Part shown: in pieces, positions 565-10,800 of the stretch | Layout of the letters: each line of letters starts with the position of its first letter | How positions within the stretch are numbered: the first letter of the stretch is position 1 | Source: Anthoceros angustus | Taxonomy: Eukaryota; Plantae; Anthocerotophyta | DNA: 64,000 nt | Assembly (NCBI GenBank): GCA_010909165.1 | Contig: VJWM01000011.1 | Location: forward strand, 558,001-622,000 | Direction: 5' to 3' | Made by a program: the position numbers and the translations under genes | The notes under the pieces: model-generated | Database searches by the model: none | Told to the model about the DNA's origin: nothing | What the model saw: only the letters and a program-made list of their open reading frames with translations

Positions 565-2571
565 CTAATTAGCTCGAATCTCTGGATGCGACCGCTCTCC
601 GACGGATAGAGCCAAGTCCGTGTCCACGTTGAGAGAGATGTCCAGGGCTTCTACCGAGTGTGTCAAAGCGCCGCTGACGACCACCGAGACAGTGAGGAGG
701 GTTAGTAGTGGGGATCCAAATGTACACGGAGGTGGGCTGTGAGAGCTTGGGAGGAGTACCTCGAAATGAATGTGACCCCGGTTGCTCCAATCTTGTGGAC
801 GGAAGACAAGGTCACGTTGCCAGAAGCCTGATGTTTTTTGGGGGCAATGTCACCTTTGTCAGCTGATGGTCGGCGTAGGGAGGAAGCTGTAACCGCAGAG
901 CAGTGGATGATGAGTTGTACCAACCTCAGTTTCAATCCGCCCGTTGATGAGTTGCAGAGCTTCCTCGAGCATGGATACATCTACATCTCCGTCCGGAAGT
1001 CGGACGACCATGTTGTCCAGCATAATTCGTGTTACTCTTCCTAGTCGCTTGTCTTGGCATTGTAGTACTTCTCTCACTTCATCTAGAGTCCGTGTTTCTA
1101 CCTGCAGGTAGTTAAAGCACGTGAAGAATGACCTGGATCTTCTTCGAGTAGAGATATTGCGTTCGTGCAGAAGCTGATAGACTAATCGCTAAAAATATAC
1201 TACAGCGAATACCTTGAAGTCAGAAGGCCAAAGAAAAGAAGCGGAGTAACTGGCTAGTACCTCGACGCCAATGTCGAGGTTATGTTCCTCGAGGTACTTT
1301 TCGACTGCGGAGATGGCTTGACTTATCCCACCAGCTACAGCAATATGGTTGTCCTTCACCATCACCATGTCAAAGAGGCCCATTCGGTGATTCTCTCCAC
1401 CACCTATCAATACCTGCACTACCTTTCTCAGCTATTCTGTGCTTACATGCTAGAAAGTTTGCACAGGGAGCGAAGTAATTCGTCTGACCGCCCACTTGTC
1501 GATTAGCCTCAAGCCCGGGACAGTCTTCCTCGTTTCCAGGATCCGGGCTGGTTTGGCGGCGTCTACCATCTTCTGCTTATCCACCAACATCAGCAGGACG
1601 CGGATTGAGGGCAGATTTTTGAACAAGGACAAGTGACGGTTTGGAGTACCCTTGTATTAGTGGCAATGCCGCTCATGCGCTGCATGAAGTTGAGCACGAC
1701 TCTCTCCGCCAGAAGAATGCTTCTTGCACTCCCTGCGCATGGCATGTTCTGAGTTCATGACCCAACTTCACCGTGCTCATCAGCACAAGAGCTGCGAGGA
1801 TACATCAACACACCCACCACGTACGACACCAAATTGCTGCCCCTTCCTTATCGAATCCCCATCCTGAGCAGTCCATTCAACCTGCCACTCAGCAAGTTCC
1901 AAATCTTTAGCTCCATGAAGTGACACAATTTGCAGGAAGCAAAGCTCAGTGACGGGCGGCATGTTTCACCTGCAGCTGCTGATCCACCTCCTGGAAAACA
2001 AGATTCGCCATGGCAATGCCAGCTATCACTCCATCAGCTTTAGCCAGGAACTGAGCCTCGGCTTCCACCTCTTGGGAGATGGTGGCCAAGCAGGTAACAT
2101 CACCTGCAGGCGGGAACTAGGTTAAGCAGAAATCATCGTCTTGCTCGGTTGCCACATCCTGAATCCAGAGCAACAGAAAAGGACCTTGATCTCCGGCATC
2201 CTCTGCAAGGGCCAGCTTGATCACATGTTGCAGATCGTACGTTGGGTGAGCAGGAAGAGGAATGGGGGACCTGGGATGCGATGTCTTGGCGCCAGCCTCT
2301 GCAACAATTGAAGCTGAACATCTGCTGCAAAACGCATGATTAGAGGGTAGAGTGCCGCCCCCAGACGGACGTACATCACCACATCGGCTTCCCACCTTAC
2401 AAATTGAGCACGGGATTGCACTTTCGCCGACCAAACCACACGTGGGATAGCAATCGCGTCTGCTCTCCAGTTCGGGAAGCTACCAGAATGCGTCAACAGT
2501 CCGGCCCATTCCTGTTGGTGGAAACCACACTGAGACGTGCACAAGCCTCTTCTCAGAGTCAGCGCCTCCAT
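565..2571 (-). CDS. QPT: Quinolinate phosphoribosyltransferase (nicotinate-nucleotide pyrophosphorylase), multi-exon, with transit-peptide-like N-terminus
   Basis: Exons encode [105 protein letters not shown]; GT-AG introns; stop at 565-567; start codon uncertain. Confidence 0.93.
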
Positions 2572-2979: not shown

Positions 2980-5922
2980 TCACAATTTCAAAATGGCTGC
3001 ACCCCCGGAGGGTTTTGAAGCAAAGAGATACAGGTCGAGGTCTTCAGGTTTGATGGTTCCGTTTTGGATGAGGGGCTTGTAATACTTCTCCTGCAAAACC
3101 AAGGTTTCTCAGTTAGGAATCGTCTCATCTGCCAAGAGGTGATCCATTAGGTGGGTAAGCATGCCTTCAACGCAGTCTCGAAAGAAGGAACATCATTCTC
3201 CTTCACGAGCGCTACGACACAGCCTCCCCATCCTGCTCCGGTTAGTCTTGCACCCACTGCTCCACTGGCTCGGCAGACTCTCACAAGTTCCTCTAGCTCA
3301 GGACAGCTGACACAGGAACACCGGAAGGGGGTCAGAACCAGAGTCATTTTCATGCTCAAATGAGAGATGCTATAGAGAAAGAGCACCTGCACTCGTACAA
3401 CTGGCTGCAGCTCGTGTGGCTTTTGTTCATAAGGTCACCCAGCCTCTCCAGGATGTCATCCTCACTACGCAGAACCACATAAATGTGACTTGGCAATTTT
3501 AGATGCTTGTTCACACCATCAACTCTAACCAAGGATGACACGAAGCATACCCAGTTGATGCACAAGCAATGAATGTGGAAGCAATGTGATGCCGAGCACT
3601 ACCTGCTACTTAGCTGAACAGCTTTTCGGAACAGGTGGACGCGCTCGGCTTCACAATATACATGAGCTGCCCTCTTAAGTGTTGCCAGGACGATTGAACA
3701 AAAGTATCTTCCTCAGTCACCGCAAACCAGAGATAGCCAAGAGGTGAATTACACTCTGGGACAGGCAATATGTCAATGCTCACCTGGAAAAGCTTGAAGT
3801 CCTTTGCAGCTGAAAGAACTGCTAGAGAGCTTGGCGAAGATGACATGATTGAATCAAGACTTCTTCCCAGGATAGTTTCTAATTCTGCCCTGGTGTAAGG
3901 CTCCTCATGTAGGTTGTCCTGGTAGCAGTAGTAGAATATGAGGACTCCAACATTGTGAGGCAATAACAGATTGATCGTGGGTGGTAAAGACCTTCAAACC
4001 TCATGGAACAGCTGCTTACTTGAACTGCTAGAAGAGCACCTGCAGCACCCCGTGAAGCAGAATAGGACACACAAAGGCCCTCCACATTCGAGAGTGTTTC
4101 CACTGATTTTACTACATCTTCAGCAGACATGCCTAGCTTAACTCCTAGAACCATCTGATTCATCATAACCAGAAATTCAGTGATATCATCCAAAACTTCC
4201 ATACAGGGTGATCACAGCAGAAGTAATGTCGTCCAAAGAAGGATCCGACTTACAGCAGCTAGTCGACACTCGACAACCCGATTGTTATAATTGGTAGCTG
4301 CGGTCACAGCTTTTTTAGATTCTGTGAGAGAATTGGCAATAACAAACGTGCCACCAGATGGAAGCACTACGTCACTTGCATGAATCGGGTCAAAGTCAAT
4401 CAACTTCGCAACCCCACGTCTGGCCATAATGGAAATTGCCTGCGGCAAGGACATCCACACAGTCTGTTACAAAACCATCTGAGTGGTCGATGGAGTGCCT
4501 TGAGGATGCATCGCATCCCGTTCCTCCTCTTGCCACAAACACTCATAGAAATCCTCTGTTCCTGGTCCTTGACGGGTGCTGAAAGTTCAGAACAAGGAAC
4601 TGAAGTTACCTGATCCATGCCACCTGATTGGGTACCAACATGGCGTTCACATTTGCATGCGAATTCTGCAATCTCTTTCTGCCCAAGAACATCGTAACGA
4701 GCTGATCAGAATAAGGAGGGAGGACTTTGAGCGTTTCTTCGGTCCTCCTAATATCATAACGTGGTGGTACAAAACCTTGCTACCATCACATGCGCTAACA
4801 CGCCCCGACATCGTTGCTATCCGTCCTAGCATACCTTTGTAAAAACAAGACTGTGAACAGCTGATATCGAAACCACTGAAGCACAAACTAGCGAAGACGA
4901 ACTGGATAAGCCTGCTCCTGTGCATAAGCTGGCGTGAGGAGGAGATGTAAGAGAGTGCACCTTAGTGAAACTGAGACCTAGCGCTGCCATAATTGCAATT
5001 GCAGAGGAGCACACAATAGCTGCAGAGCTTGATAAACCAGCTCCTGCATGACTTAGATGCGCTATGGCTCAGCTCAAATGCGCACTCCAAAACCAAGAGC
5101 ACGAAACCCCAACAGCAGAAAAGACACAAACCTCGAGGAACAATGCCATCGACCAACAAGTTCAGTCCCTCATACGACCGCCCAAGATCTCTTAGGTGCT
5201 CAAACACACCTATGTACCTGCAGAAGAAAAAACGTCAGGATCACAGACTATCAACCTCTGCAAGCACTGAGACGAGCATTTCCAGAGGACAAGACCAGTC
5301 GCTTACCCACACAGTACATAGTTTGCCCAAACATGGTTCCCTCGATCCACCTCCTACAAACAGAAGGGCCAGCTGTAGACCGCTGTTATACCTCTCAATG
5401 CATGCCGTCCTGTCCCAATAATGCCAAGAAACAAGGAATTTTGCGACAGCAGGTGCCTGCAGACTACGAGAGACCCCCACCTGAAGAGGATCTGCAGGAA
5501 AGGAATAACTCTGGAAGTCGTCAGCCTCAATGTTGGCCACATGCAGCTGCGGGATGTCTTCGTCAGAATACCTGCGCCCGATGGCCACAATGGTGTCGTG
5601 ACGAATTGCCATGGGCAGCACCGAGTATCCCTCATAATCGATATGCTCTCCGATCAAATTCACCCGCCCTGAACTCATCATCACATCTCAGGAACCCTCA
5701 GACACGAACAGGAACATGTCAAAACAAGCATACGGCAGTGGTGGTGTGACAAGCAGCACCTGGCGCTCTTGCAAAAAGCTCAGGCTCCTCCCCGTACATC
5801 TCCTGGAAGCTCTTCTTGAGAATTGCGTACCGCTCCTGCGCGGCCTCCAGCTCGGGCCCTTCCCCGTACACATCCTCCAAGCGGGTGAGGACAGGCACGC
5901 TCTCATCCTCATCCGAAGCCAT
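2980..5922 (-). CDS. GALK: Galactokinase (GHMP kinase), multi-exon
   Basis: Motifs [75 protein letters not shown]-terminus [12 protein letters not shown]. Confidence 0.95.
4835..4917 (-). CDS. Duplicate (alternative) 83-nt GALK exon encoding [28 protein letters not shown]
   Basis: Same length and phase as exon 4961-5043 ([28 protein letters not shown]); flanked by CAG and GTATG; no stop codons. Confidence 0.8.
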
Positions 5923-7803: not shown

Positions 7804-10800
7804 ATGGCCACAGCGAAGGCTGAAGCTTCTTTTCTTCTCCTTGCACGTCATTGGCTTTCAGGCGGGATCCAACAAATTGGTGTGTGTACAGGGATTCTAC
7901 GAGGAGCTCATGGTAACCTCATCCTAGTGACTCGACCCCTGGCAAGCAAAGCCTCCAGGTGCAGCAGTGTAAGGAGCCCAGCACTTCCAGTTCTGGAAAA
8001 GTGTGTGGGTAGGGACGTGTTTTCCAGCGATGGTCGTTGCCAGGAGCAGGAGCACTTGTGGCAACAATTCTTTCTGGACCCTACCATGTGGTGGGACAAC
8101 AGACGAGATAAGAAGAGCTCCCGTTCTCCTGACTTCCGGCGAAAGGGGTCCGAGGAGCTCCTGCTAACCTCATCTAGGAGTCGACCCCTGGCAAGCAAAG
8201 CCTCAGGTGCAGCAGTGTAAGGAGCCCAGCACTTCCACTTCTGGAAAAGTGTGGGTAGGGACGGTTTTCCAGCGATGGTCGTTGCCAGGAGCAGGAGCAC
8301 TTGTGGCAACAATTTTTCTGGACCCTACCATGTGGTGGGACAACAGACGAGATAAGAAGAGCTCCCGTTCTCGCCTGACTTCCGGCGAAAGGGGTCCGGA
8401 GGTGCTGTGCTTAAACAACATGTTCAAGCCAGCTTGGGTTGATGAGCAGCTCATTTCCTTGGATATGCAGATGGGCCATGGTGCCAGTGTAAGGAGCCCA
8501 GCACTTCCACATCCGATGCGTCATGGTGCCTCTCCTTCCAAGTCCAGGTCTCAGGGTAAGCCTGAACCTGGGAGGCGCTCAGGATCGGTAATGGGCGTCA
8601 TTACTGCTGTTACCGTGAGCACGTTATGCCAGCAGGGGAAGCTATCTGAGGCCGTTGGAGCCCTGGAATCTCTGGCGCACACAGACTCTCCCATTTCTCA
8701 GTCTCTGTTCTACACTGTGCTGAAACTGTGTACAGCCAAGAAGGATTTAGTTGTGGGGCGACGAGTTCATGATCTCATTGTCAAACTTGGGTACGAGTCG
8801 AGTGCATACTTGGGGAACCATATCCTGCGCATGTATGCATGTGGAGGTAGGCTACAGGAGGCTATGGATGTGCTCACCAGGGTCCGCAAACCAGATGCCT
8901 TCATGTGGTCCTCCATAATATCTGCATACGCTAAGCATGGGAGAGCTAAGGAAGCCGTACAACTGTACCATAAGATGCGTTGGTCAGGGGTGAAGGCGGA
9001 TGCTCACGTCTTTGTAGCTGCCCTTCAAGCTTGTGCATTTGCTGCCGACTTGGAATCTGGCAGAAAAGTGCACCATGATGTGGTGCGGAGTGGCATTCCT
9101 ACTAACTTGATTGTTGGCAACTGCTTGGTGGACATGTATGCAAAATGTGGCCAACTGAAAGATGCACGCCAGGTTTTTGACAGCATGGCCACCAAGGATG
9201 TGGTGACATGGACTGCCCTGATATCTGGGTATGCAAAATGTGGTGAACTGGAAGATGCACGCCAGGTTTTTGACAGCATGAACAGAAAGGATGTTGTGAC
9301 GTGGACTGCCCTGATATCTGGGTATGCGCAGCAAGGACGAAGAGGCGCTTGTGTGTATGGACAAATGGAGCAAGAGGGCCTGATTTTGGCTGACCGTTTT
9401 ACTTTTGCTTGTCTTTTGAAGGCCTGTGCAAGCACTGGTGCCTTACAGAAGGGCAGGCAGCTGCACTCACAGATTGTGAAAGAGGACTGCTGGATGACAT
9501 AGTGTGGCAACTGCCTGGTGGACATGTATGCAAAATGTGGTGAACTGGAAGATGCACGCCAGGTTTTTGACAGCATGACAAAGGATGTGGTGACATGGAA
9601 TGCCCTGATTGCTGCAGGGACTCGGCCAAGAGGCGCTTGTGTATGGACAGATGGAGGAGGCAGGCCTTATTTTGGCTAACCATGTTACTTTTGCTTGCCT
9701 TCTGAAGGCCTGTGCAAGCACTGGTGCCTTACAGAAGGGCAGGCAGCTGCACTCACAGATTGTCAAAAGAGGACTGCTGGATAATGTAGTGTTGGGCAAC
9801 TGCGTGGTGGACATGTATGCAAAATGTGGTGAACTGGAAGATGCACGCCAGGTTTTTGACAGCATGGCCGCAAAGGATGTGGTGACATGGAATGCCCTGT
9901 TAGCTGGATATGCACAGCAAGGACTCGGCCAAGAGGCGCTTGTTGTGTATGAACGAATGGAGCAGGAGGGCCTGATTGTGTCTGACCATGTTACTTTTGC
10001 TTGCCTTTTGAAGGCCTGTGGAAGCACTGGTGCCTTACAGAAGGGCAGGCAGCTGCACTCACAGATTGTGAAAGGACTGCTGGATAACGTGTTGGGCAAC
10101 TGCCTGGTGGACATGTATGCAAAATGTGGTGAACTGGAAGATGCACGCCAGGTTTTTGACAGCATGAACACAAAGGATGTGGTGACATGGAATGCCCTGA
10201 TATCTGGGTATGGTACTTGTGATGAAGGTCACAGGCACTAGCTTGTTTTGAGGAGATGTTAGGTTGCCGGTATTCAGCCTAATGATGTTACTTTTACTTG
10301 CCTTTTAGTAGCATGCAGTCATGGGGACTGGTCCACGAGGGTCGCAAGCACTTTGATTCCATGGCTGAACAGCATGGCATCAAACCTACTATTGAGCATT
10401 ATAATTGCATGATTGATCTTCTTGGGCGTGCAGGCCATTTAGATGAGGCAGAGAAGATGCTATTATCATGTGAGGGCCAAAGTAATGTTGTGGGCTTGAC
10501 GTCTTGTTGAATGCCTGCAAAAGTCACGGGATATAGAGAGGGCGATGTGGTGTTTTGAAAGCATTGTTAGGCTGGACCCCCAGCAGGCGTCTGCATATGT
10601 GCTCATGGCCAATGCCTATGCAGATGCAGGCAGGTGGACCGATGTAGACAGGATTGAAACACAGAGAAGGGCAGGCAGGAGCTTACAAGAAGCCTGCATT
10701 GGCGACCATTGAGGTGAATAAGCAGGTACATAGATTTATGGTGGGAGAAAGGAGAGAGGATATTGCGCTTAAGGTAGAGAGCACGAATGCACGTCTGAAG

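What the first reader, a model, noticed from the sequence alone, without database searches (positions are those of the whole stretch)
4835..5043. Candidate mutually exclusive exons for the ATP-binding loop of galactokinase
Seen: two tandem 83-nt exons with identical phase and canonical CAG/GT ends: A (4961-5043) [28 protein letters not shown] and B (4835-4917) [28 protein letters not shown]. They are strongly diverged at silent sites yet stop-free, and separated by only 43 nt. Splicing in both would frameshift; retaining the 43-nt intron keeps frame (83+43=126). Established: GxGLSSSA is GHMP motif II, very short intervening introns sterically enforce mutual exclusion, and such exons are rare in plants. 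Inference: two isoforms with different kinetics or substrates; from memory, B's SSSSxLVC resembles GalNAc kinase (GALK2) and A resembles plant GALK.
Basis: partly seen in the sequence, partly recalled or inferred. Interest (0 to 1): 0.8.

Follow-up and report, generated by a model that had tools for sequence, protein, structure and literature searches.

The report
Ancient either-or exon pair in galactokinase
This plant's galactokinase gene carries two old, diverged copies of the exon for its ATP-binding loop, only one of which fits in a message. Mosses and a green alga keep the same pair and a moss makes both forms, but here only the first copy was seen in RNA.

Summary
On the minus strand, a 13-exon galactokinase gene (CDS 5922..2983) has two 83-nt exons in the same phase, A at 4961-5043 and B at 4835-4917. 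Both have AG/GT ends and they lie 43 nt apart. Both encode GHMP motif II plus the helix after it.

A and B are 57% identical in DNA, with 22 of the 36 differences at third codon positions. Random change gives this much protein identity with P about 5e-5.

The same A/B pair, 48-85 nt apart, is present in Ceratodon, Sphagnum, another moss and the alga Klebsormidium. Hornwort B groups with moss B (support 93/97.5). In Ceratodon purpureus one locus is annotated with both forms, in two isolates, and the proteins differ only inside this exon. Nine distinct angiosperm-type loci checked (Primulina and eight metagenome loci) have A only. Marchantia has two intronless genes.

The main gap is in this genome. 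Transcript contigs from four runs (this species and three relatives) all join A to exon 6, and none covers B.

B's likeness to GALK2 is two residues; A matches GALK2 equally well. No paper describing this pair was found. The scan noted other old exon pairs in this genome, but none in galactokinase.

The parts
2983..5922 (-). Galactokinase coding region. It has 13 exons: 5760-5922, 5481-5668, 5307-5353, 5132-5217, A 4961-5043, 4610-4678, 4254-4439, 4020-4154, 3784-3918, 3603-3673, 3387-3464, 3165-3306 and 2983-3090.
   Evidence: All 12 junctions are present in the transcript contigs of 4 runs. Pfam hits are GalKase_gal_bdg 2.7e-15 on exon 2, GHMP_kinases_N on exons 5A, 5B and 6, and GHMP_kinases_C 4.3e-12 on exon 12.
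5132..5217 (-). Exon 4. It ends in phase 1 and supplies the first G of the Gly codon that either exon A or exon B completes.
5044..5131 (-). Intron 4 (88 nt, GT..AG), removed when exon A is chosen.
   Evidence: The junction 5042/5131 is in all four runs.
4961..5043 (-). Exon 5A (83 nt). It encodes GHMP motif II (the phosphate-binding loop) and the helix after it, and is the form seen in RNA.
   Evidence: The A-type signature [11 protein letters not shown] is shared with mosses, Klebsormidium and angiosperms.
4918..4960 (-). The 43-nt spacer intron between A and B (GTGCAC..GCACAG). It is pyrimidine-rich and has yUnAy branch-point candidates 13 and 26 nt from A's donor site.
   Evidence: The shortest of the 12 confirmed introns in this gene is 74 nt.
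4835..4917 (-). Exon 5B (83 nt), the alternative copy. It is intact, in the same phase, and has AG/GT ends. It carries the B-type signature S8, L10, V15 and an aromatic residue at position 22. It was not covered by any transcript contig laid.
4679..4834 (-). Intron between exon B and exon 6 (156 nt, GTATGC..GGGCAG). When A is used, the whole of 4679-4960 (282 nt) is removed as one intron.
   Evidence: The junction 4678/4961 is in all four runs.
4610..4678 (-). Exon 6 ([23 protein letters not shown]). It starts in phase 0 and so accepts either A or B.

Best explanation
Exons 5A and 5B are an ancient tandem duplicate of the galactokinase exon that encodes the phosphate-binding loop (GHMP motif II) and the helix that follows it, and they are kept as a mutually exclusive pair. 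Each message can carry only one copy, for two reasons. First, each exon is 83 nt, so including both or neither shifts the reading frame. Second, the 43-nt spacer puts B's branch point only about 13-26 nt from A's donor site, which is too close for A to be spliced to B. The result is two enzymes identical except for up to 13 of 28 residues in that loop and helix. A is the default form in this organism. B is inferred to be a minor or condition-specific form here, because it has stayed intact and under protein-level selection since before hornworts and mosses split, and because a moss makes both forms. What is shown: the anatomy, the selection, the orthology, A usage here, and A and B transcripts in Ceratodon. 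What is inferred: B usage in this organism, steric exclusion, and any functional difference between the two enzymes.
For: Anatomy and frame are established. Silent sites between A and B are saturated while the protein is kept: pS 0.91 against pN 0.24, codon-position differences 9/5/22, and simulation P = 5e-5. Orthologous pairs with AG/GT ends lie at the same gene position in Ceratodon L007 (48-nt spacer), moss L003 (51), Sphagnum L005 and L012-L016 (76), Klebsormidium L010 (85) and the unidentified L001. B orthologs are constrained, with pN 0.21-0.26 against pS 0.66-0.86. Hornwort B groups with the three moss B exons, with support 93/97.5. In Ceratodon, locus KC19_10G123600 gives KAG0559692 (B) and KAG0559691 (A), and locus M758_10G119200 gives KAG0603766 (B) and KAG0603768 (A). 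All are 498 aa and differ only at residues 170-188. Alternative transcripts in that annotation were added by PASA from RNA-seq assemblies (PMC8245031). Sphagnum models use B in some species and A in others. AlphaFold models of the two Ceratodon isoforms are equally confident (pLDDT 90.5 and 89.1) and have the same loop and helix 168-183. In Sphagnum the introns around A and B survive while neighbouring introns were lost.
Against: In this genome and three close relatives, each transcript contig joins 4678 to 4961 (A to exon 6), and contig depth on exon B is zero. Contigs drop minor variants, so this does not prove absence, but there is no direct evidence here that B is used. No raw-read junction counts were available. 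Word searches found no B-type protein from a hornwort. The Klebsormidium B exon is not resolved as an ortholog of land-plant B, so the age beyond bryophytes is uncertain. Steric exclusion is inferred from lengths and from knowledge of other systems; it was not tested.
Confidence: 0.75

Rival explanations
1. Exon B was a working alternative exon in the ancestor and still is in mosses, but in this hornwort lineage it has recently fallen silent and is an intact but unused relic.
For: Only A-containing contigs were found in four runs from four related organisms, with zero depth on B. No hornwort B-type protein was found by the word searches.
Against: B has no stop, no indel, and intact AG and GT sites. 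It is no further from the moss B exons (18-19/28 identical) than Sphagnum B is from Ceratodon B (18/28), so no relaxation of constraint is visible. Contigs cannot show rare isoforms.
Confidence: 0.17
2. B acts as a regulatory (poison) exon. Its inclusion together with A shifts the frame and sends the message to decay, tuning galactokinase level rather than making a second enzyme.
For: A plus B is 166 nt and shifts the frame. Some spacers, at 76-85 nt in Sphagnum and Klebsormidium, may be long enough to be spliced.
Against: A poison exon needs no protein conservation, yet B keeps motif II and its own class-specific residues while silent sites are saturated. The Ceratodon B transcripts are full-length, in frame, and carry B instead of A. 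The 43-nt spacer here is far below the gene's shortest intron of 74 nt.
Confidence: 0.05
3. The similarity is a chance or decaying pseudo-exon with no function anywhere.
For: None beyond the lack of B reads here.
Against: The simulation gives P = 5e-5. The pair is conserved in at least five other taxa with intact splice sites. B-type isoforms are annotated in mosses.
Confidence: 0.01

Closest known systems
Mutually exclusive tandem-duplicated exons enforced by a short intervening intron (the classic case is alpha-tropomyosin exons 2/3; cited from my own knowledge)
   Same: The exons are adjacent, homologous, and of the same length and phase. The length is not a multiple of three. The spacer leaves the downstream branch point too close to the upstream donor site. 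The isoforms differ only in one homologous segment.
   Different: This is a plant or streptophyte case, in a metabolic enzyme's nucleotide-binding loop. No usage of the second exon has been shown in this species, and no regulator or tissue pattern is known. Tests for competing RNA pairing were negative.
Ceratodon purpureus galactokinase locus KC19_10G123600 / M758_10G119200 (GenBank KAG0559691/2 and KAG0603766/8)
   Same: It is the orthologous gene with an orthologous A/B pair (L007: A 1673-1756, B 1804-1887, 48-nt spacer). Both isoforms are annotated and differ only at residues 170-188.
   Different: There, both forms are in the annotation. Here only A is seen. The moss has exons 6 and 7 fused.
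Human N-acetylgalactosamine kinase GALK2 (PDB 2A2C/2A2D)
   Same: It is the closest solved structure to the plant enzyme (TM 0.92 on the target, 41% identity), with the same motif II loop and helix. B shares S8 and L10 with it.
   Different: A and B each match it at 10 of 26 aligned positions (hand count on the alignment), so B is not specifically GALK2-like. The S8/A9/L10 state is also found in the chlorophytes Bathycoccus and Chloropicon, so it is probably the ancestral state. No substrate inference follows from it.
Marchantia polymorpha galactokinase genes (P0212, P0235)
   Same: They are the same enzyme family. One copy has SSSAAIVC and the other SSSSALVC at the start of the helix.
   Different: They are two separate intronless genes (L008/L009 and L011), not one gene with an exon pair. 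Apart from positions 8 and 10, both are A-like, and the tree does not place either with B.

Membership tests
Galactokinase (GHMP kinase superfamily, eukaryotic GALK2-like branch) | N-terminal galactose-binding signature | tested here: met
   Exon 2 hits PF10509 at 2.7e-15, 56.1 bits against a cut-off of 23.1, and TIGR00131 gal_kin at 3.8e-12.
Galactokinase (GHMP kinase superfamily, eukaryotic GALK2-like branch) | GHMP motif II (PxGxGLSSS phosphate-binding loop) | tested here: met
   Exons A and B both match PF00288 from position 29 (17.5 and 16.6 bits; 23.0 bits together). The single-exon scores lie below the whole-protein cut-off because each exon is only 28 aa.
Galactokinase (GHMP kinase superfamily, eukaryotic GALK2-like branch) | GHMP C-terminal domain (motif III) | tested here: met
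   Exon 12 hits PF08544 at 4.3e-12 and gal_kin at 9.6e-13.
Galactokinase (GHMP kinase superfamily, eukaryotic GALK2-like branch) | Whole-protein score above the curated cut-off | not tested
The orthologous full-length proteins (for example P0157 and P0155) carry all three Pfam domains.
Galactokinase (GHMP kinase superfamily, eukaryotic GALK2-like branch) | Phosphorylates galactose at C1 | not testable with these tools
   This needs an enzyme assay.
Mutually exclusive exon pair from tandem exon duplication | Adjacent homologous exons of the same length and phase with their own splice sites | tested here: met
Mutually exclusive exon pair from tandem exon duplication | Including both or neither destroys the reading frame | tested here: met
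   Each exon is 83 nt.
Mutually exclusive exon pair from tandem exon duplication | Both copies kept by selection at the protein level | tested here: met
Mutually exclusive exon pair from tandem exon duplication | Transcripts exist with one copy or the other, never both, in this organism | tested here: inconclusive
   Only A is seen in contigs of 4 runs, with no contig on B, and contigs hide minor forms. The feature is met in the ortholog of Ceratodon.
Mutually exclusive exon pair from tandem exon duplication | A mechanism that enforces exclusivity | tested here: inconclusive
   The 43-nt spacer compares with a minimum of 74 nt among this gene's 12 introns, and spacers are 48-85 nt in the other taxa. 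Steric block is inferred. No competing RNA structure was found.
   phmmer against PDB finds GALK2 with A (E = 1.6) and finds nothing with B. A and B each match GALK2 at 10/26 positions by hand count on the alignment.

The most novel reading that the evidence does not exclude
The A/B switch is a streptophyte-old isozyme device. The B form keeps the ancestral S-[SA]-L start of the P-loop helix and the A form is a streptophyte novelty, and the two enzymes differ in nucleotide handling, sugar range or regulation. The switch was lost in the line leading to angiosperms and was replaced in liverworts by two intronless genes. This gene would then be one of a set of ancient either-or exon pairs that bryophytes kept and flowering plants lost.
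Probability: 0.35. Interest if true: 0.7.

Novelty: new member of a known kind. Interest (0 to 1): 0.6.

Why it matters
Mutually exclusive exons are rarely documented in plants, and deeply conserved ones are rarer still. This pair swaps the ATP-phosphate-binding loop and helix of a core sugar-salvage enzyme. It has been kept since at least the common ancestor of hornworts and mosses, and probably since streptophyte algae, yet it was absent from the flowering plants sampled here. That offers a clean natural experiment: two enzyme forms that differ in up to 13-15 residues at the active site. It also suggests that bryophyte gene models choosing A or B arbitrarily, as the Sphagnum annotations do, hide a real isoform pair. 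Together with the other old exon pairs noted in this genome, which I did not check, it points to a class of ancient splicing switches lost in angiosperms.

Tried and rejected
(1) RNA structure as the selector. The MFE fold of 4780-5090 has z = -1.7. Duplex energies between intron 4 and the spacer in four taxa have z from -0.47 to +1.29. A first, larger duplex script timed out. No support was found.

(2) Word search with the B-type region of Sphagnum P0155 (residues 161-200), meant to find B-type full-length proteins from transcript assemblies. It gave only 14 candidates, and the single extra hit, P0294, is a non-plant GALK2-like protein. This is uninformative, because isoforms that are 97% identical are hidden inside the 90% clusters.

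(3) phmmer of exon B against PDB gave nothing at E <= 10.

(4) Look-ups of genomic loci for Spirogloea, Closterium, Selaginella and Diphasiastrum found no record, so lycophytes, ferns, gymnosperms and Zygnematophyceae remain unsampled at the DNA level.

(5) Literature searches for galactokinase with mutually exclusive or duplicated exons, in mosses and in hornworts, found nothing relevant.

(6) The idea that Marchantia's two intronless genes are retrocopies of the A and B messages was rejected. Both are A-like outside positions 8 and 10, and the tree leaves them unresolved.

(7) The organism behind L001 (Logan SRR31114908) could not be identified. It is 45-65% identical to the plant proteins held, and nothing is close to it.

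Full report
**Observation.** Exon A (4961-5043) and exon B (4835-4917) are each 83 nt. Each is preceded by CAG and followed by GT. They are separated by a 43-nt GT..AG spacer (4918-4960). Translating A + spacer + B straight through gives 70 open codons. The DNA is 47/83 identical. Sixteen of the 28 codons encode the same residue, counting the Gly codon that the previous exon completes, and 13 of those 16 use a different codon.

**Gene and RNA evidence.** The surrounding gene is a 13-exon galactokinase on the minus strand (ATG at 5922, stop at 2985-2983).
- Twelve introns of 74-282 nt are confirmed by transcript-like contigs of four public runs. One run is 100% identical to the window (same species). 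The other three are about 95% identical and are labelled as three other organisms.
- All introns are GT-AG except the last, which is GC-AG (3091-3164).
- Exon-by-exon Pfam and NCBIfam scans give the galactose-binding signature, GHMP_kinases_N and GHMP_kinases_C. A and B hit the same profile positions with nearly equal scores.
The joined spliced protein was never built for, or sent to, a search tool.
- In all four runs the contig joins 4678 to 4961, that is exon A to exon 6. Contig depth over exon B is zero: the bin 4772-4875 is 0, and the depth in bin 4876-4979 is exactly the 19 bases of exon A.
- So A is the form in the dominant message. Contigs cannot exclude a minor B form, and no raw-read run was offered. 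The caps for the run search and for laying reads are now used.

**Selection.** The differences between A and B fall 9/5/22 on codon positions 1/2/3, with pS 0.91 against pN 0.24. With 36 random substitutions, only 5e-5 of 200,000 trials kept at least 16/28 identical residues. Both copies have therefore been under protein-level selection for long enough to saturate the silent sites.

**Relatives.** A word search with the 70-residue read-through returned three short ORFs whose contigs turned out to be galactokinase loci of other organisms. Each one has an A-type exon followed closely by a B-type exon. More loci came from proteins found through a representative search with exon 7 and a word search with the Spirogloea protein, and from a metagenome scan.
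- The pair, always with AG/GT ends, is present in five further taxa:

| Taxon and locus | Spacer |
|---|---|
| Ceratodon purpureus (L007) | 48 nt |
| A related moss (L002-L004) | 51 nt |
| Sphagnum (L005, L012, L013, L015, L016) | 76 nt |
| Klebsormidium nitens (L010) | 85 nt |
| Unidentified GC-rich green-lineage organism (L001, about 65% identical at best to the plant proteins held) | about 70 nt |

- A-type exons share SSSAAIVC[SA]SA. B-type exons share SSSS[SA][LFC]VC[VA]SV.
- Identities are 22-26/28 among land-plant A exons, 18-25/28 among land-plant B exons, and 12-18/28 between the classes.
- B orthologs have pN 0.21-0.26 against pS 0.66-0.86.
- A maximum-likelihood tree of the 84-nt exons puts hornwort B with the three moss B exons on one side of a branch (93/97.5). 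It puts all land-plant A exons, including angiosperm ones, on the other side. Klebsormidium A and B are unresolved.
- The duplication therefore predates the hornwort-moss split. Because angiosperm A groups with bryophyte A (82/99), it probably predates land plants, but the tree has only 84 columns.

**Is B ever used?** Yes, in mosses, according to the public annotations.
- The Sphagnum jensenii, S. troendelagicum, S. balticum and S. magellanicum models carry exon B. The S. fallax and S. compactum models carry A.
- Ceratodon purpureus locus KC19_10G123600 is more telling. It gives KAG0559692 (B) and KAG0559691 (A), and locus M758_10G119200 in the second isolate gives KAG0603766 (B) and KAG0603768 (A). 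Each is 498 residues, and they differ only at residues 170-188.
- The genome paper states that alternative transcripts were added by PASA from RNA-seq assemblies (PMC8245031). This is annotation-level evidence; I did not see the reads myself.
- A Logan transcript of the L003 moss (P0156) uses A.

**Distribution.**
- Primulina huaijiensis (L006) and eight further distinct angiosperm-type loci from metagenomes were checked with tblastn. Each has a single A-type exon and no detectable B remnant. The motif scan of the remaining angiosperm-type loci also found a single exon in each.
- Marchantia polymorpha has two intronless galactokinase genes.
- Annotated proteins of Spirogloea, Closterium, Selaginella, Diphasiastrum and the conifers are A-type, but their genomic DNA could not be fetched.
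- The chlorophytes Bathycoccus and Chloropicon, and human GALK2, have S-A-L at positions 8-10. B therefore keeps the older state there, and A's A-A-I looks like a streptophyte novelty.

**How it most likely works.** At the RNA level, an 83-nt exon means that including both or neither shifts the frame. The only yUnAy branch-point candidates for B's acceptor lie 13 and 26 nt from A's donor site, inside a 43-nt spacer. That spacer is far shorter than any confirmed intron of this gene (minimum 74 nt). From established knowledge of short-intron exclusion, with alpha-tropomyosin exons 2/3 as the classic case (my knowledge, not checked here), A cannot be spliced to B. The choice is therefore between exon4-A then A-exon6, and exon4-B then B-exon6. 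I found no support for competing RNA pairings.

At the protein level, AlphaFold models of the two Ceratodon isoforms are equally confident (pLDDT 90.5 and 89.1). In both, the exon forms the loop 163-167 and the helix 168-183. The nearest solved structure is human GALK2. In GHMP kinases this loop, at the N-terminus of that helix, holds the ATP phosphates (established knowledge). The class-specific differences lie at the first helix turn (positions 8-10) and along one helix (positions 13, 15 and 22). A difference in nucleotide handling, catalysis or stability is therefore plausible, but it is untested.

It holds only for S8 and L10. A and B each match GALK2 at 10 of 26 aligned positions (hand count on the alignment), and phmmer links A, not B, to GALK2.

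**Novelty and context.** Seven literature searches found no description of this pair (one search was for annotation methods). The isoforms already sit in GenBank for Ceratodon without comment. The scan's notes list other old either-or exon pairs in this same genome, in MATE, IREG3, CASTOR/POLLUX, STR14, a splicing factor, NAT, HDA9 and AGPase. I did not check them.

**Limits.** That the organism is a hornwort is the readers' view; I did not verify it. The main open point is whether B is used in this organism.

Noticed in passing
window 580-2400, minus strand (e.g. exon 1261-1413): The gene just downstream of galactokinase on the same strand is a quinolinate phosphoribosyltransferase. One exon hits Pfam QRPTase_C at 3.1e-15.
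   Followed up: partly
L005 3-260 and 1488-1997 (Sphagnum contig): The Sphagnum ortholog has lost the introns between exons 2/3/4 and between exons 6/7/8/9, but keeps the introns flanking and separating the A and B exons. This fits a splicing role for the pair.
   Followed up: partly
L008/L009 501-2000 and L011 501-2015 (Marchantia polymorpha): Marchantia has two intronless galactokinase genes on one chromosome. One has SSSAAIVC and the other SSSSALVC at the start of the P-loop helix. This may be a gene-level replacement of the exon switch, but the tree does not resolve it.
   Followed up: partly
L010 6175-6279, 6370-6462, 6546-6677 (Klebsormidium nitens): Two partial tandem copies of the 5' part of exon 9, each with an acceptor-like cag, lie upstream of the complete exon 9. 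The copies stop at ...SLAVLA and lack the 3' part and a donor site.
   Followed up: partly
L006 242-1112 (Primulina huaijiensis): A partial second copy of galactokinase exons 4, 5A, 6 and part of 7 lies about 2.5 kb upstream of the complete gene.
   Followed up: no
window 3091-3164, minus strand: The last intron of the galactokinase gene is GC-AG, not GT-AG, and is confirmed by contigs of all four runs.
   Followed up: yes
window about 7960-8440: Repeated blocks of about 170 nt (...gctcctcggacccctttcgccggaagtcagg...) lie upstream of the gene. I saw them only when reading the sequence.
   Followed up: no
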